Part shown: piece by piece, positions 3,336 through 64,000 of the stretch
How the letters are laid out: every line of letters begins with the position of its first letter
How positions within the stretch are numbered: the first letter of the stretch is position 1
Origin: Octopus bimaculoides
Taxonomy: Eukaryota
DNA: 64,000 nt
Direction of reading: 5' to 3'
Assembly (NCBI RefSeq): GCF_001194135.2
Contig: NC_069008.1
Coordinates: 15,208,963 to 15,272,962, forward strand
Notes under the pieces: model-generated
Databases searched by the model: none
Seen by the model: the letters and a program-made list of their open reading frames with translations, nothing else
Told to the model about the DNA's origin: nothing
Translations under genes and position numbers: made by a program

Positions 3336-4477
3336 CTGAAATAATAAAGAAACATCAGTGTAAAATATGGAGGCTACTTAAAAATACAGATTCAAAAGTG
3401 GAAAATTTACGTTTCTACATGAATAAACATTTACCTGAATGACTGTTTAGCCCTGAGGCGTCTCTGAGCAGAAATATGTTAGACATTTCATTCAGCCTGT
3501 CTCTCTAGCATTGTATATCTAGGACTACATCATCCAACACAGTCTTCAATATTCATAAATGAAAGGTGAAATTTAAGAGAAATGTGCTGTCATTTCTAGT
3601 TGGTCATGTGAAGCAAATTATGTGTTTGAAAATCTTACAATATAGAATATAAATCATCTCCCTCTCTCTCGTTTTCAATTGTTTCTTATACTATTTTCAT
3701 TGATTCCACTATTTCTGACTTTGTCTCCATTTGCTTTCTCAATAAATATTCTTTAATTCCAGTCATTACCTCCCTAACCATAACACACACACAAAATTGA
3801 TAGAAAGGACAAGAATAATATTATAAGATAATATCTTGCTTTGTAATTTTTATCCTTTTCTTTTTCTTTCTTTTTTTTTTTTTTTTTGCTTTTGCTGTTA
3901 AATACGCTTCTGTTTCATATATAAAGGAATTTACGACTCTGAAAAAATATTTTGTTTCTAAAACCTGCAAAAATTGGCTCAGACGTGGCTTTGTGGTAGG
4001 AACCTTTGTTCCCAACTAGATGGTTCCAAGTTCTGTCCCACTGTATAGCACCTTGAACAAGTTATGAGAAAACAAATTACGAATGGTTTCGGCACACATC
4101 TGTACTTATATCAATTAACAAACATTCTATAAATTATTGGATTCTGAATATTTCAGTGATTGGAGTGTACTTTAGAATATTTCTGCAACTAAAACACACA
4201 ACAGACTAACGCGGCAACGATGGAGAGTGTAGAATGGAGCTTGCACAGGCAGAAATAGCAGCCAAATCTCACACAGATCATAACCATCTCCCTTCCATAA
4301 CTGAAAAATGGCATTGAAATCTTGCACAAACCATAGATACCCCTCTTACATTGCTAGAAATAGCAGCGAAATCTCGCACAAATCATAAACATCTCTCATG
4401 CATAAAAGATGAAGACAAAATAAGAAACAACGTCTACAGAATTAAAAGATTAAATGGTTTCATTGTGTAATACTTAC
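3336..4477 (-). other. Predicted 5' UTR intron 1 of gene A (representative of all ten units)
   Basis: Donor GTAAGT and acceptor cactgatgtttctttattatttcag. Homologous acceptors at 9126, 13107, 17308, 22876, 28818, 34408 and 53142 (-), and 38717, 45171 and 57396 (+). Confidence 0.72.
4248..4410 (-). repeat. 52-bp repeat, 3 units, gene A intron 1
   Basis: Three gaaatagcagc(c/g)aaatct-like cores, the middle one degenerate. Confidence 0.75.
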
Positions 4478-7898: not shown

Positions 7899-9060
<1,162 letters not shown>

Positions 9061-9780
9061 TCATTTTCTTTCAGATGATAAATATTGAGGATGTATCTTC
9101 AGTTATCCCAATGTCATATGATATTCTGAAATAATAAAGAAACATCAGTGTAAAATATGGAGGCTACTTAAAAAATACAGATTCAAAAGTGTTTTACACT
9201 TACTGTACTTTTATTATTATTATTTTTTTTTTTTGCTCGGGTCAAACACTGAAGTTTAACATCGTAATCTACGCCGTTTTAAAGGTATATAAATAAAATT
9301 TCATTAAAAGATATCCATTTTCCTAAAAATTACGAGGGAAAAAATTGGATCCTGTGAATTTTCCTAAAGTCCTCTCCCCTCTTTGGAGCAAATTTTTGTT
9401 TTCATATTTCTTTAATACACATTTTTTTCACATCTATTACACTTTTCTGTTTTCGTCACCGTGAGTTAAAGTAAACATTAACCGCCATCTCTTTGCCATA
9501 GCTAGAAATAGCAGCTAAATCTGGCAGAAATCATGGATATCTCTCATCCATAAAAGATGCGGGAGACAGAAACAATCGACACGTCAAAAACCGAACGTCT
9601 ACAGAATTAAAAGATTAAATGTTTTCATTGTTTAATACTTACGGAAATGTTTCATAAAAGAAAGAATAGTTATAAAGTGTGTGAATTATGTGTATTGAGA
9701 AAAGTATCAAAAGTGTTTGTAGAAGTTAATTGAAACAAATTCCTGCTCGAATTATACTTCTATCAAAGTGAAGGTAAAAA

Positions 9781-11858: not shown

Positions 11859-12944
<1,086 letters not shown>

Positions 12945-14483: not shown

Positions 14484-15441
14484 NNNNNNNNNNNNNNNNN
14501 NNNNNNNNNNNNNNNNNNNNNNNNNNNNNNNNNNNNNNNNNNNNNNNNNNNNNNNNNNNNNNNNNNNNNNNNNNNNNNNNNNNNNNNNNNNNNNNNNNNN
14601 NNNNNNNNNNNNNNNNNNNNNNNNNNNNNNNNNNNNNNNNNNNNNNNNNNNNNNNNNNNNNNNNNNNNNNNNNNNNNNNNNNNNNNNNNNNNNNNNNNNN
14701 NNNNNNNNNNNNNNNNNNNNNNNNNNNNNNNNNNNNNNNNNNNNNNNNNNNNNNNNNNNNNNNNNNNNNNNNNNNNNNNNNNNNNNNNNNNNNNNNNNNN
14801 NNNNNNNNNNNNNNNNNNNNNNNNNNNNNNNNNNNNNNNNNNNNNNNNNNNNNNNNNNNNNNNNNNNNNNNNNNNNNNNNNNNNNNNNNNNNNNNNNNNN
14901 NNNNNNNNNNNNNNNNNNNNNNNNNNNNNNNNNNNNNNNNNNNNNNNNNNNNNNNNNNNNNNNNNNNNNNNNNNNNNNNNNNNNNNNNNNNNNNNNNNNN
15001 NNNNNNNNNNNNNNNNNNNNNNNNNNNNNNNNNNNNNNNNNNNNNNNNNNNNNNNNNNNNNNNNNNNNNNNNNNNNNNNNNNNNNNNNNNNNNNNNNNNN
15101 NNNNNNNNNNNNNNNNNNNNNNNNNNNNNNNNNNNNNNNNNNNNNNNNNNNNNNNNNNNNNNNNNNNNNNNNNNNNNNNNNNNNNNNNNNNNNNNNNNNN
15201 NNNNNNNNNNNNNNNNNNNNNNNNNNNNNNNNNNNNNNNNNNNNNNNNNNNNNNNNNNNNNNNNNNNNNNNNNNNNNNNNNNNNTTCATTGTTTAATACT
15301 TACGGAAATGTTTCATAAAAGAAAGAATAGTTATAAAGTGTGTGAATTATGTGTATTGAGAAAAGTATCAAAAGTGTTTGTAGAAGTTAATTGAAACAAA
15401 TTCCTGCTCGAATTATACTTCTTTCAAAGTGAAGGTAAAAA

Positions 15442-15466
15442 CGGAAGTACAATTATTGCCCATGCG
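15442..15466 (-). promoter_or_regulatory. ETS + NRF1-like element, gene C
   Basis: cggaagtacaattattgcccatgcg; donor at 15298-15303. Confidence 0.65.
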
Positions 15467-18616: not shown

Positions 18617-19390
18617 TATATATTTTATATTTTATATATTTTATATTTTATATATATTTTATATATATATATTTTTTTTTTTTCACTTTTCTTGAAATTC
18701 CGATATAACCGTAATCTACACATTCTGAAAGTTGTGAAGAAACTAAATCGACGCGTGTGAATTTATAGAAACCTTTTTTCCCCAGGGAAAATTTATTTTC
18801 ACAAATTCTGATGTAATCGGAATCTACACCTCCTGACAGGTATTTGTAGAAAATTTCCTTTCAATAAATACATTTTTCGGAAAGTTATGAGGAAACGAAT
18901 TGCTGATGTATTAGGCATACATCAGTAGCTGTACCAAGAAACAAACATTCGATTAATTATAATTAAGTACAGGTTTCTAAACTCAAAGTGTTGTAGTATA
19001 TTTCAGGATATTTCTAAACTGAAGTGTTCTAGTATATTTGAGGATATTTCTCAAACTAAAACCTGCAACAAACTAACGGGGCAACAATAGAGAATGTTGA
19101 AGGTAGCTTCCAGGTAGAAATAGCAGCTAAATCTTGCACAAATCATAGACATCTGCTATCATTAAAAGATGACTGAGAAACAAAATGATACGTCAAAACA
19201 GAATTAAAAGATTAAATATTCTCATTGTTTAATACTTACAGAAATGTTTCATGAAAGAAAGACTTGTTATAAAGTGTGTGTATAATATGTATTAAACGTA
19301 CTTTAAGTGTGTAAGTTTGTGTGTACTTGTAAAAGTTAAATAAGAGACACTGACGCACAAAACAAATTTGTTTCAATGTGCAAGTGAATG

Positions 19391-19415: not shown

Positions 19416-20883
19416 TCTCGTTTAATAAAACACATATGGGAGGTAACTCTTGTTGGAATTTCTAACCGTAATCCAGTTTTTTATATTTCTGACAAAAATT
19501 TTCTTCGATAAGTTTTAGGTATTTTATATGAAGGTTTCACACTTAATTTTGAAAGAAGAATTAGTTCTCTTTCCTTTAATCATGAGCTCTACAAACGATG
19601 ATGATTTTAATTTCTACTTTTCGATGATGCATGGGTAAGAGTTTCTATCGTCTGCTGGCATACCTCGAGACAACAGCCACATGTTCCAAGCGAGCTTGTG
19701 TCACTCTCCGCCGAGCAACAAATATCCCTCTCTTGATTACATGAACTGGAAATCAAATGACACCAGCTCAATGAGTCAGGATGCAGGCAAATGACAGAGG
19801 TTTGAATCGAATGAATGGATGGGTGAGGTGAGTGTTTCTTTAAGAAAAATTAAACTTTAAAAAGATATATTTCCCAGATTCGTAATCCCTATTTTTCTAC
19901 ATGGATAACAAAAATATTCGTAAAAATGTTACAAATCAAGAAATTGCTGTGGGAACGAGGGAAAATTTCCAATGATTCCATGCTATGGGGGGGGGGGNNN
20001 NNNNNNNNNNNNNNNNNNNNNNNNNNNNNNNNNNNNNNNNNNCCGGTTTTCCCATCCCCTCTTTTTTTCGAATAAAAATAAGGGGTCTGCTGCATATTAG
20101 GAAGTCAGAGTACTTGATTCCATGCAGAAAATGAGGGTGGGGGTGAAATTTCTGACGCTTCTACCTTACCCCACCCTGTTTTTGGACCCCAAAAATGGTT
20201 TTGTAGTATATTAGATCACCAGAACTTATTCAACATAAAAAAATTTTTCAATGATTCCAGATGGGGTAGGGGGTCCGATTCACCCTTTTTTTCCAAACAA
20301 AAATAAGGAGTTTGCAGAATATTAGGCAGTTAGTGTACTTGATTCCACGCAAAAAAAATATTTTTTCTTTGATTGTAAACTAGACCCTTGTTAAATTGAA
20401 TATAAAAAACAATTTTTCAGAAAGTTATGAGAAGAGGCTGTTGTGGAGCACTAAACTATAGTTATACCCAATGTCTTTCGGTTGTGGCCACTTTGTTTTG
20501 TACTAGAGGTTATTTTGTACATATCTGACAACTTTACTATATTCCTGTCAATGAAAAAGCCTTAAATTATGTTATCATTAACATATTTAATGAGTGAAGC
20601 ATTTCAAAATTAATAAACAATAAATTAAAAAATTAAAATTAATAAAATATAAATTGTGGAAGTGATAATCAACAAAGAACCATGTGTAAGATTGCCAGGA
20701 GGAGGAATTTTCGAATAGAGGGCCCTACATTATGGAAAAGGGCATGAAAGTAGGGGAATGGATGGGGAGAAAATTAGGCAAGAAAGAAAAAAACAAAATC
20801 TTCAGGTTCATTTCAGAGTCATAATTTCCATTATTTAAATCACAGGAATATTATAAAATCGTTTACAAAAGAAACCATACAAA

Positions 20884-22771
<1,888 letters not shown>

Positions 22772-25156
22772 TCACTCTTTACAAAGAGTTTGCTTTGTAC
22801 ATCAATTCCTACCAGTCTTAAAAGATGATAAATATTGAGGATGTATCTTCAGTTATCCCAATGTCATATGATATTCTGAAAACATAAAGAAACATCAGTA
22901 TTAAATATGGAGGCTACTTAAAAAATACAGATTTAAATGAGGGAAATTTGCATTTCTACAGAAATAAACATTTACCTAAACAACTGAACTCATAATTTTA
23001 CATTATTGTTTAGTCCTGATGCATTTCTAACTGAGCAGAAATATAATTAAAGACTTTCCATCCAGTCTTTCTCTTTAGTATTGTATATCTAAGACTACAT
23101 AATCCAATATAGTCTTCAATGTTCATAAATGAAAGGTGAAATTAAAGAGAAATGTGCTGTTATTTCAAGTTAGAATGTGAAGGAAACCGTGTTGTTTTTG
23201 CAGGTTTGCAGGTCTTACAATTATTTTGCCGCAGATCAAACAAAAATAAACATTGATGAATGAAGAAAAGACAACTGAATTCAAAGAAAACAAAAAAAAT
23301 TAATAAAAAATGTAACTGGTCTGGCAGTGGTTAATAAGATTGATTCCCAAGCATGTGATTCTAGGTTCAGTCCCACAGTGCAGCACTTTGAAATTCTGTT
23401 ATTTTATCAGAACTGTACTTTTAAATATAATTGAAATGCACTTAGAAGTTATTGCCTAGTTATCTTGTCCTAATATGTTTAAGATGAAAATTGAATTAAA
23501 AATATAAAACTTATTCAAATATATAACAACACTTTTCACTGTTAAACTATGACCAAATCTCAGCCTAAGTTATTTACCAATTGAGATTATTTTCATTTCA
23601 TTTCAGTTACCCATCTATTAATATATCTCTTAACCTGTATATCTATTGATATATCTGTAGATTCACCTACATATCTGTCTGTCTCTGTTTAAATAATTAT
23701 TTCTACTTTCCCTTCATCTCATGTATATATTTGTCTGCTTTTATAACACCAATAAACATTTAAACCTAATAAGAAAAAAAAAACATTCCATAAAGAAAAC
23801 AGAAGACTTTGAGTGCCCCAGCATGGACATGGCCTTTTGTCTAGAACATATAAAAGATAAGTGTACGATTGACTGATATTTGCTGAGGTTATTTCCCATC
23901 AATTTAACTATCAATCGAAAAATCTTTTAATTTATAGATCGTCATGACATTGTTTTATTATGCTGAACATTTCAACTGTGCCTTTGAACACAAGAATGCA
24001 GAATGATATAGAACTTCTACCTCCCCTTCACTCTTTCTAATTATATAAAACTTCTACCTCCCCTTCACTCTAATTATATAGTACTTCTACCTCCCCCTCA
24101 CTCCTCCATCCCCACCCACTTTCAAGCGGGCTTTGTTTTATTTTCTTTCCTGACTTCGCTATTTCACTTTGTCTTTATCTCCAATTCTTCCCCTCCCCCA
24201 CAATCTCTTTATGAATATATCTCTCCATCTGATTTATTGTCTTTCTTAGTGTAACAGATAAACAGAACAGAGTAACAAGCGGTATATTATTGTGGATAAA
24301 GCCCTACTTTGACATTTTCATCCCTTTTGTCCCGTTTTTGTTGTTAATTTTCTTCCTTCATACAATGGTAATTATGACGTTGAAAAACCATTGTTTTTCC
24401 CCAAAACTACAATTATGTTTTGTTTTTATAGTTTTATTCCCCTTCACCTCTTCCACACACACTTCTCTACTGATGTCGGAACGTCTGCCTTACCATCTTC
24501 AGTGTAACACATGATTAATGCTTTAAACAGAACACCAGCTGTAAGCATAAGAATTTATCATTTTAGAGAAATCAGAGAAGGAGTTAATGTAAACAGTGCT
24601 GGAGTAATTTGTAATTAGGCGCAGGGTTACCCTACGGATAATCTGAAACCGATGTCAGATGACTGAGAAGCAGCCTGAAATCTTTTAATTTTATTCCAGA
24701 AAGGAAATTGTGGAATAGTCCTCAAATTTTTATCTATGAACAAAATTGTAATCTACATCATAAAAATTTATGAGGAAACCAAATCAGCATATCTACACAA
24801 ATGTGTCCACTGTCCCAAATTTATATCCTCAGAACATCCAGAAAAATGGATATTTTTTGAATGAAAGTTTTACAAATATGCTTAAGATAGTGTAGATTCT
24901 ACTCATATCGGAAATAGTTGGGATAATTTTGTCTGCAGGTGGGGCGAGAAGTTTCGGAAAATTCACACAAATCAGCGTTGTTTCCTTCTTAAATTCAATA
25001 CTTACAGAAATGCTTCGTACAGGAAAGACTTGTTATAGAGCCTGTGTATTATATGCCCATCAAGTATGTGTGTGTCGAGTTGATAAACATATCAGAAGTA
25101 TTCGTAGAAGTTAAGACACACTTCGGAACGAGATGAACTTCCTTTAACATTCAATA

Positions 25157-25182
25157 CGAAAGTACAAATTAAGGCGCATGCG
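25157..25182 (-). promoter_or_regulatory. Degenerate ETS + NRF1-like element, gene E
   Basis: cgaaagtacaaattaaggcgcatgcg (16-bp spacing); donor at 25000-25005. Confidence 0.62.
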
Positions 25183-27560
25183 TATCGGTTATTCGAAACA
25201 CGGGGGGGTAACTCATGTCGGTACCTTTCTGCTTCAAGCAACTCTTCGTTTATCTGTCTCTCTATGTAGCAAAGATGTTCTTGAACTAGTTTCAGATATT
25301 TTATGTGAAAGTAATTCCTCGCAATAACACTGACTATAATCCTGGTTTCACACCTAATTCTGAAAGCAGAATTAGTACTCATTAGCTCTAGAAACGATGT
25401 TGGTTTTAATTTCGACAGTTTTCTATCGTCAGCCACTGGTTCCAAGCGAACGCATAAGAGTCCCTCTCTGTCGAGTAAGATACGTTTTCACGAGGCTTTT
25501 AAGAAACAAACACTTTACACATTACATGTTGTAAATATAAACAATGGTAGAACCATAGTACTTTTTTTTTTTAACCGTATGTTTCGTCTGCATTTGAAGT
25601 GGGTAAACATGTAAATTTACAATTGGAAACATCAACTTGTTTTACTTTCTGATAATTTAAAACTATTACTTCAGATTGAATGTTGTCAAGATAAAATATA
25701 ATTAGAAGTACATTCATAGGCATTGTCGTGGCTGTGTGGTCAGGAGTTTGTTTCGCAACCACATGGTTCTTGGTTCAGTCCCTCTACTTCAGCATTAAAC
25801 TGAATCTCATCTATCTCAAATCTCTAAGTAAATGGGTTGAGTCTTTCAGTGACTTTCATAACCTGCTCCTGTAATTTGATATCTCTGTATTTACTACTAT
25901 AGTATCTCTTTATACCAGTCTTTGGGTATGATGCCTTCCCGTACAACCCTAGGTAGAGGATGACTACACCATATCCTACTCTGCCAAATATTTTAAGAAT
26001 TTCAGAGATAAATCCTGATGGAGAAGGGGTTTTCCCACGCTTTATGATAATTGCTTTACTTATAACATTGCTGTCAACAAGAATAAAGGTACTCTTTGCG
26101 AAGTAGGAAAATTCTCTTTCCCAAATTCATTCTCCATATTTATGAGCCTTTCATAATAGCACTTCCATGTCTCTTTCTTTTCAGCACTAAATGCAAGCAT
26201 GCTATTATCATTCTGCACACATTGCTCTCTCACATCTCAATGTTCTCTGGTACACTGCCTCACAAACCAAAACACCTCATGTCTTTGGTCCTCACATAAT
26301 AGAATATTGGAAAAACTTTGAAGACAAGGACCCCTTGGTTTGAAGAGACACTCATACTAAGGGAGGTTGCCTTGTGCTAGTTGAGAGGTTAAAGTGTAAT
26401 AAAGATATAGAGATAGGTGCCAAACTAGAAAGGAAACACTTGGCTACTTCTGTAGGAAAAGGAAGGAAATCAAGGAGAGATGAAGAGAAATACACCAGGG
26501 AATAGTGGGAGGAATCCAAGTGGTACAGAGGGGTTAGAGGGGGATATTTCAAAAGAATTTCAGGGAAGATGTGACTGTAGCAAGTGACAGTGAGAGATGT
26601 AGGCTTACCCCAGCCATGGCTATGTTAGGTCTGTGAGGGCATGGAAAGTGTGTGGGTAGGCATGTGAATGAAAGTGGCAAGGGCTGCAGCAGGTGGGGGA
26701 GGGGGGGCTCTTAAAAAGATAGCTTGTGGGAGATTTTTGACAGAGGGCAGATATAAGGAGGGATACGGCATGGCTGTAAAGGAGATGCTTGTATATATGG
26801 CCACAATTTTGCTTAACATGTATTCTCAGGTGCAACAAATCACCAGATATCTTGGTCCTTTGTTGTCTCCTCTGTGAGACTCAAAATCTGAAGATCATTT
26901 CTCACCACTTTGTCCTACATCATCCTGGGTCTACTTCTTGAAAAGATCCTCTCCATAATTACAGATAGGCACTTCTTTATGCAGATTCTCTTATCCATAT
27001 GCATCACATGACCATACCAGTGCAATCTTCTATCTTGCACACCAAGCAGGGTCATTTTTCTTTAGGGATTAGTAATTTATTTGCTTTCCTTTTTCTTAGG
27101 ACTCAGGTCTTTGCTAAATTGACTCTAAGGCCCTTTGACTCTCGACCTTGCTTCCACACCTGATTCTTGTCAACAAAAAAGCCATAAATTTTGTTGCTGT
27201 TAACATATTTAATGAGGGCATCATTTAAAAATTAATAAATAGTAATATACAGTAATTAATATACAGCAAACTGGAGAAGTGATATTCAGCAAACACATGT
27301 AGGGATACCAGGATGAGCAGTTTCCGAATACAGGTCCCTACATTATGGAAAAGGGCATGGATAGAGGAGAGGAGAGAAAATTTATAAAGAAAGAAAAAAA
27401 CTGAAATCTTTGGCTATACATTAGTTTCAAAGTCCTAATCTCCTTTACTTAAGTCAGACGAATATTACAAAGAAGACGTTTACAGAAAAAAAACCATAGA
27501 AACTGTAATACGAGTACGTTTATGAGAAGTCACAGTGCTACTGTGAGAGAATGAGTCACT

Positions 27561-28658
27561 TTAGATATCACACTGAAATGGTTTCTCTTCTGTATGAATA
27601 CTTTTGTGTATATTTAAGTCACTAACAACAGAGAATGATTTACCACAGATATCACAATGATATGGCCTCTCTCTAGTATGAATACGTCTATGGACAGTTA
27701 AATAACCGTTTTGAGAGAATGATTTACCACAGATATCACAGCAATATGGCTTCTCTCCTGTATGAATACGTTTGTGACCAGTTAATGTACTACTCTGGGT
27801 GAATGATTTACCACAGATATCACACTGATATGGTTTCTCTCCTGTATGAATACGTTTGTGTGAAGAAAGAGTGCTACTGTCAGAGAATGATTTACCACAA
27901 ACATCACAATGATGTGGCTTGTCTCCTGTATGAATACGTTTGTGTACAATTAAAGCACTGCTATCAGACAATGATTTACCACAGATATCACAATTAAATG
28001 GTTTCTCTCCCGTATGAACACGTCTGTGTTTTTTTAGCTCACTATTTTGAGAGACTGCTTTACCACAGATATCACAATGATATGCTTCCTCTCCAGTATG
28101 AAGACGTTTGTGTACAGTCAAAGCAGAACTGACAGTGAATGATTTACCACAAATATCACAGTGATATGGTTTCTCTCCTGTATGACAACGTTTGTGTGCA
28201 GATAATGTACCATTCTCACTGAATGATTTACCACAGATATCACAATGATACGGCTTCTCTCCTGTATGAATACGTCTGTGAGCAGTTAAATGAGCACTTT
28301 GAGAGAATGATTTACCACAGATACCACAATGATACAATCTCTCTCCTGTATGAATACGTTTGTGTCTAGTTAAGTGACAACTGCGATAGAATGATTTACC
28401 ACAGACATCACAAGGATATAGCTTTCCTCTTGTATGAATATATTTGTGTACAGTTAGGCTACGTTTCAGAGAAAATGATTTACCACAGACATCACAGTGA
28501 TACAGATTCTCTCTTGTATGAATATGTTTGTGTTCAGTGAGGTCACTTTTTCGAGAGAAGGACCTTTTACAGACATCACAGTCATATGAAGACTTTCTTA
28601 TCTCTTTTATCATGTCTTCATGAGAAATCAATTCTTCAACCTCCTCACTCTTTTCCAT
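27561..28658 (-). CDS. C2H2 zinc-finger gene F, 12 fingers
   Basis: Open frame from MEKSEE with 12 fingers. A 13th finger is cut by TAA at its second Cys codon, with helix relic HSSTVTSH after it. Confidence 0.92.
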
Positions 28659-29881
28659 TATTTTTCTCCTCAAATCACAATGTATATATATTGTTCTAGC
28701 TTTCCTTCTTATAATTCACTCTTTACAAAGAATTTGCTTTGTACATCATTTTCTTTCAGTCTTAAAATATGATAAATATTGAGGATGTATCTTCAGTTAT
28801 CCCAGTCATATGATATTCTGAAATAATAAAGAAACATCAGTGTAAAATATGGAGGCTACTTAAAAAATAGATTCAAAAATGGAAAATTTACTTTTCTACA
28901 GAAATAAAGATTTACCTGAACAACTGAACTCATAATTTCACATTATTGTTTAGCCCTGAGGCATCTCTTACTGAGCAGAAATACGATTAAAGACATTCCA
29001 TCATGTTTTTTTCTTTAGCATTGTACATCTAGGCCTACATCACCTAATACAGTTTTCAATATTCATAAATGAAAGGTGAAATTTTAAGGAAATATGCTGT
29101 TATTTCTAGTAGGTCATGCCACTACATAGAGAGCTATGAAGAAAACTATATTGTTTTTGATTTGGAGTTCAGTCCCACAGAAAGAAGAAACCGAATAAGT
29201 GTTCTTGTTATGAGATTCCATGATAGATGTAGACAAGCATCAACATGTCATTTGATTCTCATCTTCCATGGAAACATGTCTGGTCATGTGAAAATATTAC
29301 CTTGCTTGGGAGCCAGTGGGGGTTGGTGACAGGAAGGACATCTGGCCATAACAATTCTACCTCAATGAATTCTGTCTGACCCAGGCAAGCATGGAAAAGT
29401 ACCATTTCTAATGATGATGAGTAAATTATATTCAGTTTATGGAGTGGCTTTTCTTGTCACTGACTCATTTTGCCAAATATCATCACCTAACTGTCCAACT
29501 TTTAATGATTGCATAGGTCAGACCCTCACCTATTTCCAAGTAAATGAATATTCTCCAACAGCAGAAGATGTTTACGAAAGAGACAGGGGAGAAAAAATGA
29601 CACTGTTTGCATAATAATGTACTCATTTACAATTATGATATGATGTAAATGTGAGGACACGCAAATGCAGACACACAGATATATGTAACTAATGGGCTCC
29701 TTGAAGTTTTTATATATCAGATCCACTCACAAGATTTTAGTCAAAAATGGAAGATACTGGCCTAAGTTGCCATGCAGTGGGACTGAACCCAAGACCATAT
29801 GTTTGGGAAGTAAACTTCGTACCCACACTAAACTAATTATCTATGTATATTTTAATAATATTGAATTTTCTATATATTTTT

Positions 29882-30390: not shown

Positions 30391-31154
30391 AAAATGGTTC
30401 ATATTTGGTTGATTAAAATTGTAATGGCAAGTATTTATTGACCTTTTTCTTTCCTTTAAAAATCGCGGACAACCCAATACATTCCGAAAGGTATTTGTTG
30501 TAAATTTCATTACAAATATCCCCATTTTTCTAAACGTTGTGAGGAAACTAAGTCGACATGTGTGAATTTACCAAAACTTTGGCGAAAGTAAAGAATACAT
30601 ACACTCGGCGGTTCGGGGTCTTACATCACCTGACGGGTATTTGTAGAAAATTTCATTTGAAAAAAATCTATTTTTCAGAAAGTTATGCGGCAAAGAATTG
30701 CTGATGCGTTGGACACACATCAGTCGTTATACCAAGAAACACACATTTGAAAAATTAGGATCTGTTCAGTCCCATAAATTATAGCAAAGTGTTGGCTGGA
30801 GTCTATTTCAGAGTATTTTTCGAACCAAAACACACAAATTAACGGGGCAGCGATAAAAAGTGTTGGAGGTGGTTTCCACAGGCAGAAATAGCAACAAAAT
30901 CTCGAACAAATTATGGACATTTCTCATCCATAAAAGATGAGAAAGATACAAAGAATCGACACGTCTACAGAATTAAAAAATTAAATATTTTCATTGTTTA
31001 ATACTTACGGAAATGTTTCGCACAGGAAAGAGTTGCTACAGAGTGTGTATATTATATGTACTCGAAGTGTGTTTGTAAAGCTGAGAAACGTATTGAAAGT
31101 GTCTGTAGAGGTTAATTAAAAGACACTGAGGAAGGAAACAAACAAACTCCGATG

Positions 31155-35420: not shown

Positions 35421-35860
35421 TTTGGCTGCTATTTCTAGCTATGGAAGAGAGTTGTCTATGGTTTGCATGAGATTTGGTTGCTATTTCTAGCTATGAAAGA
35501 GATGTCTTTGATTTGTGTGAGATTTGGCTGCTATTTCTAGCTATGGAAGAGAGATATATATTATTCGCACGAGATTTGGCTGCTNNNNNNNNNNGGAAGA
35601 GAGATATATATTATTCGCACGAGATTTGGCTGCTATTTCTAGCTATGGAAGAGAGATATATATTATTCGCACGAGATTTGGTTGCTATTTCTAGCTATGG
35701 AAGAGAGTTGTCTATGATTTGGGCTAGATTTGATTGCTATTTCAAACTATGGAAGAGAGATGTCTAGAATTAGCAGCCAAATCTTGCATAAGTCATAGAC
35801 ATCTCTCTTCCAGAACTAGAAATAGCAGCCAAATCTCGCACAAATCATAGACATGTCTTT
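35421..35860. repeat. 52-bp tandem repeat: 7 units followed by 2 inverted units (gene G intron 1)
   Basis: Consensus GAGATTTGGCTGCTATTTCTAGCTATGGAAGAGAGATGTCTATGATTTGTGC with a 50-52 bp period. Orientation flips at ~35765. Contains a short N gap. Confidence 0.88.
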
Positions 35861-36464
35861 CCCATGATGTATAGGTCACTTCTTTAGACTTTTCAATGTT
35901 ATCCATCATTGATGCTATAAATATATTACAAATTGTAAGCATCATAATTTATCTTTTTAAGGAAATGAGAGAATGTGAACAGTGCAGGAGTTAATTTGAA
36001 ATTAGGTTCAGGCTACCCTAGAGACAGTTTGAAATCCATTTCAGATTACCAAAAGTAATGTTTGTAATGCAAAGCGTGAAATCAATTGATATTGAAATAT
36101 ACATTACTTACTGTATGTATTCAACGCAAAAGTAAGCCTATTTCTCATGTATATACAGAGAGATATGATATTTGCATACAAGCACAATTGTAATATATGA
36201 GTATGTGGAAGCAAAATCGATGTGTATGGAATATAATCAGTACCAACTTCATCCAGAAGTTTATTTGAGAACAAATTTTATAGAAAGTTATGCGAAAACA
36301 AAATTGCTAGTGGGGGGGGGGGGGACACATTCTTAGTTATACCAAGAAACAAACATTTGATGAATTATAATAAGGTATCGGTTTCTAAACATTTCAGTGA
36401 TTGGAGTATATTTCAGAATAATTCTCAGACTAAAACACACAACAAATCATAGTCATCTCTGACC

Positions 36465-36625
36465 CATAGCTCGAAATAGCAGCCAAATATTGCACAAATC
36501 ATAGATATCACTCAATCGTAACAAGAAATAGCGGTTAAATCAAGTACAAATTACAGATATCTTTCTTCTATAGCTAGAAATAGCAGCTAAATCTCGCACA
36601 AATCATAGACATCTCTCATTCATAA
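36465..36625 (-). repeat. 52-bp repeat, 3 units, just inside gene G intron 1
   Basis: Three gaaatagcagccaaat-like cores. Confidence 0.8.
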
Positions 36626-36790
36626 AAGGTAGAAGAGACACAAAGAATCGACAGGTCAAAGACCCAATAGTGTTGAAATATGGAATATTTTCATCAATAC
36701 TTACGTTATTATTTTATAAAGGATACTGTAGTTATAATTATATAAAAGTGTGCTAATTACGAGAAGTTAGATGTATTTTGCAGCACAATA

Positions 36791-37232
36791 CGGAAGTGCA
36801 TTTAATGCGCATGCGTACCTTTTATATAAAATATTTTCGCGAAATCTTGTTATCTCCCTTTAATAGATGCTTGTCCCCCCACCACAATCGCTTGACAACC
36901 GATGTCGGTGTGTTTACCTGCCCGTAACTTGGAAGTTCGGCAACAAGCAACCGATAGAATAAGTGCTAGGCTTACAAAGAATAAAACCGTGGTGAAAAAC
37001 AAACTGGAAAAATTCAAGTCAAATCAGAGAAAATTCAACAGAGTCCAGATCCGAAACTCTTTCTCACGGTCGAACTGTCTTCTGCAAATAACCCCAGAGG
37101 TGCTATGCCGGTATGGACACAAGAAAACAAGACAGCATAAATACAAAAAATCAAAACATAAAGGGAATTAACAATCGTTAGCTACTGAAAACCGTGTTCA
37201 AAAAATGCGCATGCGCACTATGCGTACTTCTG
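36791..37232. promoter_or_regulatory. Divergent promoter region of the G/H pair
   Basis: G element cggaagtgcatttaatgcgcatgcg at 36791-36815. H element tgcgcatgcgcactatgcgtacttctg at 37206-37232, in the opposite orientation. Donors at 36699-36704 (-) and 37374-37379 (+). Confidence 0.72.
36868..36985 (+). mobile_element. SINE fragment between the G and H promoters
   Basis: Matches the 3' half of the 44005-44398 SINE (gcttgacaaccgatg...gatagaataagtgctaggcttacaaagaataa). Confidence 0.7.
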
Positions 37233-37480
37233 TTTCCATTTTGGCATCAAATTATTTGTGTCAGGTGCTTGAGGTTATGAATACATTTATAATGCTTTAT
37301 AATACACACTTGTTATACATTGTTCACCTACTACGCTCGCTTGTAACAACTCTGCCCTTTATAAGACATTTCCGTAAGTATTAAACCACGAAAATATTCA
37401 GTCTTTTTAATTCTGTAGACGTTCTGTTTTTGACGTGTCGATTCTTTGTCTCCCCAATCGTTTATGGATGAGAAATGTCC

Positions 37481-37770
37481 GCGATTTAGGTACTATTTCT
37501 TGCTATGGAAGCGAGACGTCTATGCTTTGTGCGAGATTTGGCTGCTGTTTCTAGCTATGGAAGAAAGGAGTCTATGCTTTGTGCGAGGCTTGGCTGCTAT
37601 TTCTAGCTTTGGAAGAGAGATTCTGTGATTTGTGCTAGATTTGGCTGCTATTTCTGCCTATGGAAGAGAGATATCTGTGATTTATGCGAGATTTGGCTGC
37701 TATTTCTAGCTACGGAAGAGAGATGTCTATAATTTGTGCGATATTTGGCTGCTATTTCTACTTATGGAAG
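37481..37770 (+). repeat. 52-bp repeat, 6 units, just inside gene H intron 1
   Basis: Cores start at ~37481, 37533, 37585, 37636, 37688 and 37740. Confidence 0.88.
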
Positions 37771-38987: not shown

Positions 38988-40310
38988 ATGGAGAGATGTG
39001 AGAAACTCAAGGAATTGATTTTACCTGAAGACATGATAAAAGAAAGAAGGAATTTGTCCTATGACTGTGATATCTGTGAAAAGACATTCTCTCTGAAAGG
39101 TAACTTGACTAAACACAAACGTATTCATACGGGGGAGAAGCCATATCATTGTGATATCTGTGGTAAATCTTTCTCTGGAAGTACTGCCCTGACAATACAT
39201 ATACGTATTCATACAGGAGAGAAGCCATATCGCTGTAATATCTGTGACAAATCATTTTCTCAAAATATTGACTTAAATAAGCACATTCGTATTCATACTG
39301 GGGAGAAGCCATATCACTGTGATATCTGTGGTAAATCATTCTCTCAAAGTGCTGTTTTAACTACACACAAACGTGTTCATACGGGAGAGAAGCCATATCA
39401 CTGTGATGACTGTGGTAAATCATTCTCTCGAAGTTATCACTTGACTTCTCACAAACGCATTCATTCGGGAGAAAAACCATATCACTGTGATATCTGTGGT
39501 AAATCATATTCTGAAAGTAGTATCTTAACAAGACACATGCGTATTCATACAGGAGAGAAGGCATATCATTGTGATATCTGCAGTAAATCATTCTCTGTTA
39601 GTAGTCACTTAACTAGACACAAACATATTCATACAGGAGAGAAGCCATTTCACTGTGATGTCTGTGACAAATCATTCTCTGCAAGTAGTGACTTAACTAG
39701 ACACAAATTTGTTCATACAGGAGAGAAGCCATATCATTGTGATATCTGTGGTAAATCATTCTCTGTAAGTAGTTACTTAGTTGAGCACAAAAGTTTTCAT
39801 ACTGGAGAGAGGCAATATCTCTGTGATATCTGTGGTAAATCATTCTCCAAATTTGGTACATTAACTAGACACATTCGTAGTCATACAGGAGAGAAGCCAT
39901 TTCACTGTAATATTTGTGGTAAATCATTCTCTGGGAGTAGCGACTTTACTAAACACAAACGTGTTCATTCAGGAGAGAAGCCATTTCACTGTGATATCTG
40001 TGGTAAATCATTCTCTCAAAGTTATAACTTAACTTGTCACAAACGTATCCACACAGGTGAAAAACCACATCATTGTGATATTTGTGGTAGATCATTCTCT
40101 GCAAGTAGTAACTTAACTTCTCACCAACGTATTCATACAGGGGAAAAGCCATATGAGTGTGGCATCTGTGGTATATTATTCTCTCAAAGTAGTGACTTAA
40201 CTAAACACCAACGTATTCATACAGGAGAGAAGCCATATCATTGTGATGTCTGTGGTAAATCTTTCTCTGAAAGTCGTAAGTTAAATAAACACATATCTAC
40301 TCATGTATAA
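38988..40310 (+). CDS. C2H2 zinc-finger gene H, 15 fingers, 440 aa
   Basis: Intact ORF with leader [10 protein letters not shown] and 15 fingers. Confidence 0.95.
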
Positions 40311-54691: not shown

Positions 54692-55043
54692 GACACAAAC
54701 ATTCGATAAATTATAATGAAGTATTGCTTTCTGAATGTATTTCACAATATTTCTCAAATTAAAACAGACAACAAACGCGGCAACGATGGAAAGTGTAGAA
54801 GGTAGTTTCCATATTTAGAAACAGCCAAATTCCGCACAAATCAAGGATAAGATAGAAGAAAGACGTCAAAACCGAACGTCTACGGAATGAATCAATGTTT
54901 AATACTTACGAAAATGTTTCATAAAGGATAGTGTTGTTATATATGAGTGTATCTGGTAGTCGAAAAATTCATTATAAATATTAGCAGTTGATGGACAATA
55001 CTTCACGCAAAGGACATAAACTATTCCGCAATGAAGGTCCAAG

Positions 55044-56149: not shown

Positions 56150-56255
56150 TTATGAATGAGAGATGTCCTTGATTTGTGCAGGATTTGGCTGCTATTTCTA
56201 ACTATGAAAGAGAGATGTCTATGATTTGTGCGAGATTTGGCTGCCATTTCTAGCT
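56150..56255 (+). repeat. 52-bp repeat, 2 units, gene J intron 1
   Basis: gatttggctgctatttctaac and gagatttggctgccatttctagc cores. Confidence 0.78.
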
Positions 56256-56681
56256 GTGGACGTCTACACTCTCCGTCGTTACCACTTCAGATTGCTGTGT
56301 GTTTTAGTTTAAGAAATATTCTGAAATGTTCAGAAACCGATACATTTTTTTATTTTTTTATATAATTTATGGAATCTTTGTTTCTTTGTATAACTACCGA
56401 TTTGTGCCCATTCCATTAGCAGTTTGTTTCCTCATAACTTTCTCCAAAATGGATAATTTTAAATAAAAATTACTGAAAGTACGTTTCAGATGATGTAGAT
56501 GAGGATTTTGTAGGAATTTTTGGTGAAAAAAAAACAAGGTACGATTGAATGGTGATTATGGATAATTTATACACGTCGACTTCTTCGTACTTGTGGATTT
56601 AAAATTATGATGAAAAATAAGGCGGAGTGTCGCATCCACATCTAAATTGGATATTATCCATGTTGAGGGGAATTTTTTGGC

Positions 56682-60821: not shown

Positions 60822-61184
60822 AATATATATATATATGGATAATCAAGCTGTTTGCAAGGAATGACCAAGAACTAAATGTCCAATAACTCAAATGATAGGT
60901 ATTTTAACTAATCACAACGGATTAGAGTGGTAAGAATATAATAAACCAACTTAATATTTTCAAATAAGCAATAATAAAAATTGGTCTCGCTACAGCATCA
61001 AAAAGTGTCAACCACCCCTAGATAATTGCCTAAGAAAAAAATAAGGGAGTCACAATGAGTAGATTAGTTGCCGTGGCTAAAACCTACAAAACTAGCCCCA
61101 ATTTAGGCTGAGGTTTAAATGCTTATCATTGCTACCAAATATCACATTTATACACTTACGTTCTCATGTGAATACAAACATGTG

Positions 61185-61330
61185 AGATGTCTACAATTTG
61201 TTCGAGACTTAGCTGCTATTTCTAGCTATGAATGAGAGATGTCTGAATTGTGTGGGATTTGGCTGCTATTTCTAGCTATACATTGTCGCCATGTTAATTT
61301 GTTGTGTGTATCTTATTTTGAGAATTCTTC
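61185..61330 (+). repeat. Orphan intron-1 module with 2 units of the 52-bp repeat
   Basis: Two cores followed by tacattgtcgcc...ttgttgtgtgt, as in the H and J introns. No ETS/NRF1 element seen upstream. Confidence 0.65.
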
Positions 61331-61621: not shown

Positions 61622-61842
61622 AGGCGGCGGCGAGCTGGCAGAAACGTTAGCAACCCAGGCGAAATGCTTAGCGTTACGGTCTGAGTTCAAATTCCGCCGA
61701 GGTTGACTTTGCCTTTCATCCTTTCGGTGGCGATTAAATAAGTACCAGTTACGCACTGGGGTCGATGTAATCGACTTAATCCGTTTGTCTGTCCTTGTTT
61801 GTCCCCTCTATGTGTAGCCCCTTGTGGGCAATAAAGAAATAA
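61622..61842 (+). mobile_element. tRNA-derived SINE, second family
   Basis: A-box-like tggcagaaacg, B-box-like gagttcaaatt, body gcctttcatcctttcgg...ataagtaccagtt...ggggtcgatgtaatcgact. Confidence 0.8.
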
Positions 61843-62817: not shown

Positions 62818-63357
62818 TCATACAACATATAATTCAGTAGCTATTTGATTCCAAAAATTGAAGAATGCTTCATTTCCAAATCTCTGACTCCACATTAATT
62901 CTGCATGTGCACCATCCATTTCTGTTGGATGTTTTAAAAAGTGGCTTTCACAAACATCACGACAAAACTGATTCCAATCTGCATATGTTGCACATATGGT
63001 TATCTCACATTGCACCATTACTACTTCTCTATCAAGACCTTTGCCTTTTCCAGCACCGATGCACCATAAATATGTAAATGCTATTATTTGCCAAATTTCC
63101 AATTTACTTCTTTCAAAAAATGAACCCTTTCTTATGTTTATAGTTTTCCGACAAACACTACATCTCCAAATTACTTTATCAATTGAGCGAGAATAATTTC
63201 CTTTAACACATGGCCATCCACAACAAATTTCTTGTCTTGATAATAAACCATATCTTCTACACCAGATAATGGCCTTTTCTGTTGTTCCCAAATCTCTTCC
63301 GAGGCGGAATAAGGTCATGGAATTAAAAGCTTCATGCTCAGGCACAAAATTTGCCAT
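62818..63357 (-). mobile_element. Internally deleted Merlin/IS1595(ISXO2)-like transposase ORF, 179 aa
   Basis: N-terminal WRCSVC...IRKGSFFERSKL and DWNQFCRDVC motifs and a C-terminal E-x-MW...AF...I...Y motif, typical of this family as I recall it. The DDE core is absent. Confidence 0.7.
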
Positions 63358-64000
63358 AGTATCCGTTATAAGCTGAATTGAAAGAAACAGATTTTGAAAC
63401 GATATTGTCGGGTCCCTCGTATCATTAATAATACCTGATTGGTAAAAGTAGATTACTGCCCTTGTTTATATTCCACAAGGGCCCGTTTCTGTTTTGTTTT
63501 GATATAACGAAGGAAAGTGTTGTATACAGTGCTCTGCTGCACTACAACTAAAAAAAAAATGTATAGGCAAGACTTCCTTTTGTACCCAAACACCTTTTTA
63601 TATATATTTTTTTCTACACAAACCCCCATTTTCGGCTACGGAGAATACGAATCTGCAAAAAAATTGGCAAAAATCGGCATTTTGAAATTAATCCCCACAC
63701 CCCCACCCCGCTAATTTCTTTTTGTGTTTGTTGATAGAAAATTTCATGTTTCATGGTGAGCAACCTAGTTAAATGCAGGAGCTTATATACGGCTAGTCAC
63801 TCTGCTAGAAATAGCCATCAAATCTGTCTCAAATCACATTGTATTATCTTAATAAAGGATACATTAGACAACCTAACTTTTGAAAAAACAAAAACAAAAG
63901 ATGTGCAATGTCTTTGTAGATCTGCTTGATTAGGGATGACCTAGGGCTAAGCAATAAGAACAACAATAGTAACAATTACAAGGAAGTCAGTATTGAATGC

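What the first reader, a model, noticed from the sequence alone, without database searches (positions are those of the whole stretch)
35421..37770. A 52-bp repeat forms variable-copy arrays just inside intron 1 of nearly every gene
The unit GAGATTTGGCTGCTATTTCTAGCTATGGAAGAGAGATGTCTATGATTTGTGC sits ~70-120 nt downstream of the donor in sense orientation. Copy numbers: A 3, B 1, D 1, F 1, G 3 (plus a separate 9-unit block), H 6, I ~1, J 2, orphan at 61185 2, E 0; C is hidden by a gap. A lone core (gctagaaatagccatcaaatct, ~63804) occurs in an unrelated repeat context, suggesting the core is transposon-derived. Inference: an expandable binding-site array, possibly recognised by the ZNFs themselves, would link transposon recognition to feedback control of the cluster. 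This is my best candidate for an undescribed system here.
Basis: partly seen in the sequence, partly recalled or inferred. Interest (0 to 1): 0.78.

Follow-up and report, generated by a model that had tools for sequence, protein, structure and literature searches.

The report
Inherited intron minisatellite in octopus ZNFs
A 52-bp tandem repeat sits just inside the first intron of most genes of this Octopus bimaculoides zinc-finger cluster because it belongs to a 5' gene module that was copied with every gene duplication. A short core of the unit is unusually well conserved, also in O. sinensis, so it may be a regulatory site, but nothing shows that the zinc-finger proteins themselves bind it.

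Summary
The 52-bp unit occurs at the stated places and copy numbers (A 3, B about 1, D 1, F 1, G 3.5, H 6, I about 1, J 2, orphan 2, E 0, C in a gap). Each array starts 48-91 nt after a conserved GTAAGT donor. The window is Octopus bimaculoides chromosome CM046628.1.

The repeat is found in "nearly every gene" by common descent. It lies inside a 5' module alignable in all paralogues: NRF1/ETS-like promoter, non-coding exon 1, donor, repeat, downstream intron. The same module with 1.5-4.5 units occurs at seven sites in two O. sinensis loci. ZNF loci of other subfamilies lack it.

Units are old. Identity within arrays (0.76) equals identity between arrays and between species. A core, TGCTATTTCT, changes 3-6% against 17-21% for the rest of the unit, in both species. 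This suggests a constrained site.

There is no support for recognition by the cluster's own ZNFs (crude recognition-code test, best p 0.14 of 141). There is no support for a transposon origin.

The "9-unit block" is a fold-back of 7 antisense plus 2.5 sense units. It holds the assembly gap, so its copy number is a lower bound.

Verdict: an inherited intronic minisatellite, possibly a cis-regulatory array. Modest interest.

The parts
4247..4403 (-). Gene A intron-1 array, 3 units
9500..9551 (-). Gene B, 1 unit plus a partial one
15285..15465 (-). Gene C promoter, exon 1 and donor (15303). The intron runs into assembly gap 14484-15284, so the array is unread.
19112..19163 (-). Gene D, single unit
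25005..25181 (-). Gene E promoter to donor. The intron diverges right after the donor and holds no unit.
30880..30931 (-). Gene F, single unit
35421..35766 (+). Extra block in gene G intron 1: at least 7 units antisense to G, including identical variant units (…ATATATATTATTCGCAC)
35585..35594 (.). Assembly gap inside one unit. Ten N stand where 12 nt would keep the period, and the flanking units are identical, so the unit count is a lower bound.
35764..35866 (-). About 2.5 units sense to G, joined head-to-head to the antisense block (fold-back junction). The junction region folds as a long hairpin.
36442..36623 (-). Gene G primary intron-1 array, 3.5 units
36704..37374 (.). G/H head-to-head promoter region and the two non-coding first exons. 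NRF1-like GCGCATGCG at 36807 and 37207, ETS-like GTACTTCCG, donors at 36704 (-) and 37374 (+).
37453..37770 (+). Gene H intron-1 array, 6 units
54810..54861 (-). Gene I, one damaged unit (3-nt deletion in the core)
56152..56260 (+). Gene J array, 2 units
61176..61279 (+). Orphan array, 2 units. It is followed by a degenerate copy of the module's post-repeat flank. The upstream part is replaced and no ZNF exon is attached.
63793..63825 (-). Weak solo unit remnant (82% over 33 nt) without module flanks

Best explanation
The 52-bp repeat is a minisatellite built into the conserved 5' module of one Octopus C2H2-ZNF subfamily.

The module reads: NRF1-like plus ETS-like promoter motifs, then a non-coding exon 1 of roughly 110-175 nt, then a GTAAGTATT donor, then about 75-90 nt of conserved intron, then the repeat, then at least 250 nt of further alignable intron.

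Shown:
- The whole module was copied with each tandem (and head-to-head) gene duplication. That is why almost every gene has the repeat at the same place and in the sense orientation.
- In the one-copy state the unit is bounded by a short direct repeat (ATGGAWG…ATGGAAG).
- The module and its arrays are also present in O. sinensis.
- A core of the unit (TGCTATTTCT, and to a lesser degree the two GATTTG) is several-fold better conserved than the rest.

Inferred:
- Copy number drifted between 0 and 6 by replication slippage or unequal exchange between units.
- One replication template switch created the fold-back block in gene G.
- Each unit carries a site for a sequence-specific factor that is not yet known, acting on the DNA or on the nascent intron RNA. 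The array then acts as a promoter-proximal cis-regulatory element whose strength scales with unit number. The 52-bp period is about five helical turns, which would place successive sites on one face of the helix.
For: Homology on both sides of the repeat in 8 window genes. Mean pairwise identity among window paralogues:
- promoter 0.79
- exon 1 3' end 0.74
- first 49 nt of the intron 0.85
- linker 0.69
- half-unit 0.80
- core 0.82
- post-flank 0.68, then 0.55

Constant offset from the donor, 74-91 nt (48 in I, which has a deletion).

Boundary structure: the array opens with ATGGATGAGAG…, repeats [GAGATTTGGCTGCTATTTCTAGCT ATGGAAGAGAG…], and closes with ATGGAAGCTACC.

Other species and loci: the same module and arrays occur in O. 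sinensis L002 (two arrays) and L005 (five arrays of 1.5-3 units). They are absent from ZNF loci of other subfamilies, L003 and L007.

Age of the units: identity within arrays 0.763, between arrays 0.762, against O. sinensis 0.756, permutation p 0.39. The arrays are old and are not being homogenised.

Position-specific conservation: chi-square p = 5e-7. Core mismatches are 7/220 against 156/924 in O. bimaculoides, and 8/140 against 125/588 in O. sinensis (Fisher 6e-9 and 5e-6). The conservation profiles of the two species correlate (rho 0.62, p 1e-6).

Solo cores: copies 20-28 nt long with 1-2 mismatches persist in unrelated flanks in O. sinensis and O. vulgaris.
Against: - Gene E has no unit, gene I has a deletion in the core, and B, D and F carry one unit. 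A given copy number is therefore dispensable.
- The conservation contrast could be inflated, because units were located and aligned through the core. It could also reflect uneven mutation rates, for example the CpG at positions 28-29.
- The O. sinensis loci are not proven orthologues. The best non-TE matches are about 81-83%, so the two species' unit sets share ancestry.
- No expression, chromatin or binding data could be consulted.
- The sense-strand array RNA has no special structure (z = -1.2).
- The exon/intron assignment is inferred from sequence only.
Confidence: 0.55

Rival explanations
1. Purely neutral minisatellite. The repeat is inherited junk in intron 1. Copy number drifts, and the apparent core conservation comes from alignment anchoring or uneven mutation. 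It has no function.
For: Presence by descent. Copy number ranges from 0 to 6, with complete loss in E and core damage in I. Overall unit identity (0.76-0.82) is not higher than that of the first 49 nt of the intron (0.85) or the promoter (0.79). No structure in the sense RNA.
Against: The core changes 3-6% against 17-21% for the rest, independently in two species, and the two conservation profiles correlate. The arrays have persisted although their units are about 24% diverged. Near-perfect solo cores survive in flanks that are otherwise unalignable.
Confidence: 0.35
2. The array is an expandable binding platform recognised by ZNF proteins of the same cluster. This would give feedback control or heterochromatin nucleation, linked to transposon recognition.
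For: A constrained core and a multimerised arrangement near the promoter. As precedent, mammalian KZNFs often target satellites, promoters and other KZNF genes, and KZNF feedback loops have been described (PMC10547256, discussion). A VNTR controls ZNF558 in cis (bioRxiv 10.1101/2020.08.18.255562).
Against: Recognition-code PWMs were built for 7 intact proteins, as 141 sub-arrays of 4, 6 or all fingers. None matched the unit better than random window segments (best uncorrected p 0.14). There is no evidence that the unit comes from a transposon. These genes carry no recognisable repressor domain upstream of the fingers, only a leader of about 35 aa.
Confidence: 0.05
3. The unit is a fragment of a transposable element, or of a satellite carried by one, that landed in the ancestral gene's first intron. 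The solo cores would be other remnants of that element.
For: Solo cores with unrelated flanks at L002:22693 and L006:25532, which share an extra TTGAAG 5' of the core, and a weak one at window 63805.
Against: No terminal inverted repeats, target-site duplications or flank homology among the solos. Every array of at least 1.5 units in about 278 kb from three species sits beside remnants of the 5' module or its partner. Metagenome hits to the core are unrelated chance matches.
Confidence: 0.1
4. The arrays act through double-stranded RNA. Inverted arrays would give hairpins processed into small RNAs or edited by ADAR. The candidates are the fold-back block in G, and the G/H and I/J arrays facing each other across head-to-head promoters.
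For: The junction 35596-35880 folds at -113 kcal/mol, z = -11.8. Rfam gives only generic miRNA-precursor-like hits on it.
Against: All Rfam hits are far below gathering scores (43.8 against 195, 38.8 against 80, and so on). Only one gene has the fold-back. Ordinary sense arrays are unstructured. The G/H and I/J arrays lie on different transcripts.
Confidence: 0.05

Closest known systems
Intragenic or promoter-proximal minisatellites (VNTRs) that act as cis-regulatory elements (general class; from established knowledge)
   Same: Head-to-tail units of tens of bp inside an intron near the promoter. Copy number differs between copies. A short conserved motif in each unit could serve as a multimerised factor site.
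   Different: Here variation is shown between paralogues and species, not between alleles. No effect on expression has been measured. The same array is shared by a whole tandem gene family.
The VNTR downstream of human ZNF558, which switches the gene in cis (bioRxiv 10.1101/2020.08.18.255562)
   Same: Tandem-repeat copy number next to a C2H2-ZNF gene, proposed to set that gene's expression.
   Different: The ZNF558 repeat has 7.46-kb units in 24 to more than 70 copies. It lies downstream of the gene and is heterochromatic (H3K9me3). The octopus unit is 52 bp, in 0-6 copies, inside intron 1, and its chromatin state is unknown.
KRAB-ZNF proteins binding satellites, promoters and other ZNF genes; KZNF feedback loops (as summarised in PMC10547256)
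   Different: No binding is shown or predicted here. The octopus proteins have no KRAB domain, only a short leader. In my recollection, the mammalian sites at ZNF genes lie mainly in the 3' finger-coding exons rather than in intron 1.
Tandem repeats enriched beside octopus C2H2 genes, reported in the 2015 octopus genome paper (recalled from memory; the paper is not held)
   Same: An association between tandem repeats and expanded octopus ZNF genes.
   Different: As I recall, that repeat has a 70-90-bp unit and lies in the flanking regions. Here the unit is 52 bp, at a fixed position in intron 1 of one subfamily. Two later papers on cephalopod C2H2 genes do not mention an intronic repeat.
Intron-mediated enhancement signals: redundant short motifs in promoter-proximal introns (known from plants and nematodes; from memory)
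   Same: The position (first few hundred nt of intron 1), the sense orientation and the additive repeated motif. GATTTG occurs twice per unit and resembles the plant GATYTG core.
   Different: The resemblance is recalled, not tested. No such signal is known in molluscs.

Membership tests
Minisatellite / VNTR | Head-to-tail tandem units of about 10-100 bp | tested here: met
   TRF finds period 52, with 1.9-6.7 copies and 70-88% matches. Units are shown in register.
Minisatellite / VNTR | Copy number varies between copies or alleles | tested here: met
   0-6 units among paralogues and 1.5-4.5 in O. sinensis.
Sequence inherited by gene duplication (part of the duplicated unit) | Homologous unique sequence on both sides, at the same offset in the paralogues | tested here: met
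   The offset from the donor is 74-91 nt, and the flanks are alignable for at least 250 nt.
Constrained cis-regulatory element | Slower evolution than the neighbouring non-coding sequence, reproduced in a second species | tested here: met
   Core 3-6% against rest 17-21% changed in both species. Profile correlation rho 0.62. Caveat: the units were aligned through the core.
Constrained cis-regulatory element | Measured effect on expression or splicing, or an occupancy footprint | not testable with these tools
   No RNA or chromatin data were accessible.
   Crude recognition-code scan: best p 0.14 of 141 tests. Experimental binding was not testable.
Transposable-element-derived repeat | Dispersed copies sharing flanks or termini (TIRs, TSDs) | tested here: not met
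   The solos share only the 20-30-nt core. All arrays lie at module remnants. Only about 278 kb was sampled, so this is not a genome-wide test.
miRNA precursor (Rfam families MIR8007, MIR774, mir-266 and others) | Score at or above the family's gathering threshold | tested here: not met
   43.8 against 195, 38.8 against 80 and 35.7 against 80 bits, all on the fold-back hairpin only.

The most novel reading that the evidence does not exclude
Each 52-bp unit, about five helical turns long, is a docking site for a protein of this same ZNF subfamily. On this reading the arrays form a cluster-wide, dosage-tunable feedback or heterochromatin-nucleating system at the 5' ends of the genes. That would be an invertebrate, KRAB-independent counterpart of ZNF-on-ZNF regulation in mammals.
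Probability: 0.05. Interest if true: 0.75.

Novelty: new member of a known kind. Interest (0 to 1): 0.35.

Why it matters
Octopus genomes hold well over a thousand C2H2-ZNF genes whose regulation is essentially unknown. This locus gives a compact, conserved 5' module whose parts can be tested directly: a bidirectional NRF1/ETS-type promoter, a non-coding first exon, a highly conserved intron start, and a multimerised core of about 10-20 nt. If the core is a factor site, natural paralogues with 0, 1, 2, 3 and 6 units form a ready-made dosage series. If it is not, the case is a warning. A feature seen in "every gene" of a tandem family counts as one observation, not ten.

Tried and rejected
I did not try to get round this.

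2. Three protein searches to collect subfamily members. Full-length queries were swamped by vertebrate ZNFs. Only five octopus proteins led to usable loci, and one look-up found nothing.

3. Orthology between the window and the O. sinensis loci. No long collinear matches were found. The best non-TE identity was about 81-83%, so the comparisons are treated as paralogue-level.

4. Metagenome scan for the core. The 14 hits were all unrelated microbial sequences.

5. Rfam. Only sub-threshold miRNA-like hits on the fold-back.

6. A second small intron ending at the conserved TTTTAG after the array. Rejected, because the AG is lost in genes F and I.

7. Coding potential of the 179-aa ORF near the weak solo unit. 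No Pfam hit.

8. The 2015 octopus genome paper could not be read. Its statement on flanking tandem repeats is quoted from memory only.

9. A MEF2-like reading of the core CTATTTCTAG. It misses the YTAWWWWTAR consensus at the conserved C. This is a recollection, not a test.

Full report
**What the window is.** The protein encoded at 38988-40310 lies on assembly GCA_001194135.2, chromosome CM046628.1, at 15.24-15.26 Mb. A paralogue that NCBI names as Octopus bimaculoides lies on the same assembly. The window is therefore an O. bimaculoides C2H2-ZNF cluster. It has 35% G+C and eight assembly gaps. It holds ten ZNF exons, visible as 84-bp-period arrays. Each opens with a conserved leader of about 35 aa, MEKSEK…SYDCDVCK. 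The cluster ends just beyond the window, where a DAO-domain gene follows.

**Checking the observation.** The 52-mer is present far above chance. Units written out in register give A 3, B about 1.4, D 1, F 1, G 3.5, H 6, I about 0.8, J 2, orphan 2 and E 0. For gene C the promoter and donor survive at 15465 and 15303, and the intron then enters the gap 14484-15284. The arrays begin 74-91 nt after the G of a conserved GTAAGTATT (48 nt in I, which has a deletion). That donor lies 110-176 nt downstream of an NRF1-like GCGCATGCG and an ETS-like GTACTTCCG motif. The exon and donor assignment is inferred from this conservation only, because RNA reads were not available.

**The block at 35421-35866.** It is 7 units on the + strand, antisense to gene G, joined head-to-head to about 2.5 sense units. 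The gap the scan program flagged (35585-35594) lies inside one unit of this block. The units before and after it are identical variants, and 10 N stand where 12 nt would keep the period. The gap size is therefore nominal, the sequence on both sides is in repeat phase, and the unit number is a lower bound. The region is non-coding.

**Why nearly every gene has it.** I oriented the 5' regions of eight genes on their promoter motif and aligned them. This shows one homologous module: promoter, non-coding exon 1, donor, about 75-90 nt of intron, the repeat, and at least 250 nt of further alignable intron. Mean pairwise identities among window paralogues are as follows:
- promoter 0.79
- middle of exon 1 0.51
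- 3' end of exon 1 0.74
- first 49 nt of the intron 0.85
- linker 0.69
- half-unit 0.80
- core 0.82
- post-repeat flank 0.68, falling to 0.55

The repeat is thus one segment of a duplicated gene unit. Its presence, position and sense orientation in each gene follow from descent and are not ten independent observations.

**How copy number changes.** The array opens with ATGGATGAGAG… and closes with ATGGAAGCTACC. In the one-copy genes (D, F) the unit is bounded by a short direct repeat. This is the usual substrate for slippage or unequal exchange.

**The orphan array.** The array at 61176-61279 is followed by a degenerate copy of the post-repeat flank. It is a relic of another module.

**Other loci and species.** The same module and arrays are present in O. 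sinensis. L002 has a head-to-head pair of about 4.5 and 4 units, with the donor at 4127. L005, on another chromosome, has five arrays of 1.5-3 units, two of them separated from their donor by insertions. ZNF loci of other subfamilies lack it: L003 (O. vulgaris) and L007 (O. bimaculoides, another chromosome) have none. L006 (O. vulgaris) has only a solo core. No long collinear matches link the window to the O. sinensis loci, so I treat them as old paralogues or diverged orthologues.

**Age and constraint.** Unit-to-unit identity is the same within arrays (0.763), between arrays (0.762) and against O. sinensis (0.756); permutation p = 0.39. The arrays are therefore old and are not being homogenised. 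The one exception is the identical variant units next to the gap.

Change is very unevenly spread along the unit (chi-square p = 5e-7). I tiled the arrays against the consensus and analysed the species separately. The core TGCTATTTCT differs from the consensus at 7/220 sites against 156/924 elsewhere in O. bimaculoides. In O. sinensis the figures are 8/140 against 125/588 (Fisher 6e-9 and 5e-6). The per-position profiles of the two species correlate (rho 0.62).

Copies of the core 20-28 nt long, with 1-2 mismatches, also occur singly at L002:22693 and L006:25532. Their flanks do not align with each other or with the module. Matches of that quality are not expected by chance in about 278 kb.

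Three caveats apply. Units were located and aligned through the core. The two species' units share ancestry. Uneven mutation cannot be excluded. With those caveats, the pattern is that of a short constrained site repeated once per unit.

- I extracted helix positions -1, 3 and 6 of every finger of seven intact proteins. I built crude recognition-code matrices for all sub-arrays of 4, 6 or all fingers, and compared their best score on three tandem units with 300 random window segments. Nothing stood out (best uncorrected p 0.14 of 141 tests).
- A transposon origin has no support. No shared termini or flanks were found, and metagenome hits to the core are chance matches.
- The sense array RNA is unstructured (z = -1.2). 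The fold-back junction forms a long hairpin (z = -11.8). It attracts only sub-threshold miRNA-like Rfam hits.

**Most likely mechanism.**
- Shown: a minisatellite inherited within a duplicated 5' module, old and variable in copy number, with a conserved core, and present in at least two Octopus species.
- Inferred: copy number changes by slippage or unequal exchange, plus one template-switch event.
- Inferred: the core is a site for an unidentified sequence-specific factor, so the array works as a promoter-proximal regulatory element whose strength scales with unit number. Whether it acts on DNA or on the nascent intron cannot be decided here.

I put about 0.55 on this functional reading and about 0.35 on a purely neutral minisatellite. 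I put about 0.05 on recognition by the cluster's own ZNFs.

**Comparison with what is known.** The class, regulatory or neutral intronic VNTRs, is familiar. A VNTR that controls a ZNF gene in cis is documented for human ZNF558, but with 7.46-kb units downstream of the gene. Mammalian KZNFs are known to bind satellites, promoters and other ZNF genes (PMC10547256). Two recent papers on cephalopod C2H2 expansions do not mention an intronic repeat. The 2015 genome paper, which I recall as reporting 70-90-bp tandem repeats beside C2H2 genes, could not be read. I therefore class this as a new member of a known kind. It is of modest interest, and its main value is as a compact, testable regulatory module and natural dosage series.

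Noticed in passing
window 4625, 19407, 25174, 31171, 36807, 55060 (- genes); 37207, 55903 (+ genes): Every gene has the same promoter signature: an NRF1-like palindrome GCGCATGCG followed about 8 nt later by an ETS-like GTACTTCCG, 110-176 nt upstream of the donor. G/H and I/J are head-to-head pairs sharing a region of about 400-850 bp.
   Followed up: partly
window 37374-37422 and the equivalent stretch in each gene: The first 49 nt of intron 1 (GTAAGTATTAAACAATGAAAATATTTAATCTTTTAATTCTGTAGACGT) is the best conserved piece of the whole 5' module. Its pairwise identity is 0.85, higher than exon 1, and it is also conserved in O. sinensis. This suggests a second constrained element, for example for splice-site definition.
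   Followed up: partly
window 35596-35880: A fold-back junction between antisense and sense units in gene G's intron forms a hairpin with a stem of about 100 bp (z = -11.8). It could yield double-stranded RNA, and together with the identical units it probably caused the assembly gap.
   Followed up: partly
window 7899-8880 (B), 11871-12850 (C), 20884-22729 (E): The ZNF exons of B, C and E have frame breaks; finger sequence reappears out of frame as …TNVFIQER…. E is also split by a gap. These are likely pseudogenes or assembly errors.
   Followed up: no
window 61626-61782; L002 around 20000-29200; L003 13600-13960: A SINE-like element (ggcgagctggcagaaacgttagc…) is repeated many times in the O. 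sinensis and O. vulgaris loci. One copy lies beside the orphan array.
   Followed up: no
window 62818-63357 (-): A 179-aa ORF with cysteine-rich motifs and no Pfam match lies next to the weak solo unit. It may be part of a mobile element, but this was not established.
   Followed up: partly
L002 22693-22714; L006 25532-25559: Near-perfect solo copies of the unit's first 22-28 nt occur in O. sinensis and O. vulgaris. They share an extra TTGAAG on the 5' side but nothing else. Their origin is unexplained.
   Followed up: partly
consensus unit positions 37-52: The core GCTATTTCTAGC is a near palindrome (GCTA-TTTC-TAGC). It is one mismatch from the MEF2-type YTAWWWWTAR consensus, which I recall from memory. 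GATTTG occurs twice per unit, and the 52-bp period is about five helical turns.
   Followed up: no
L007 14830-14885 and 15850-15910: An inverted duplication of about 60 nt flanks a ZNF exon fragment and a SINE in another O. bimaculoides cluster. Its 16/20 match to the core is at chance level.
   Followed up: no
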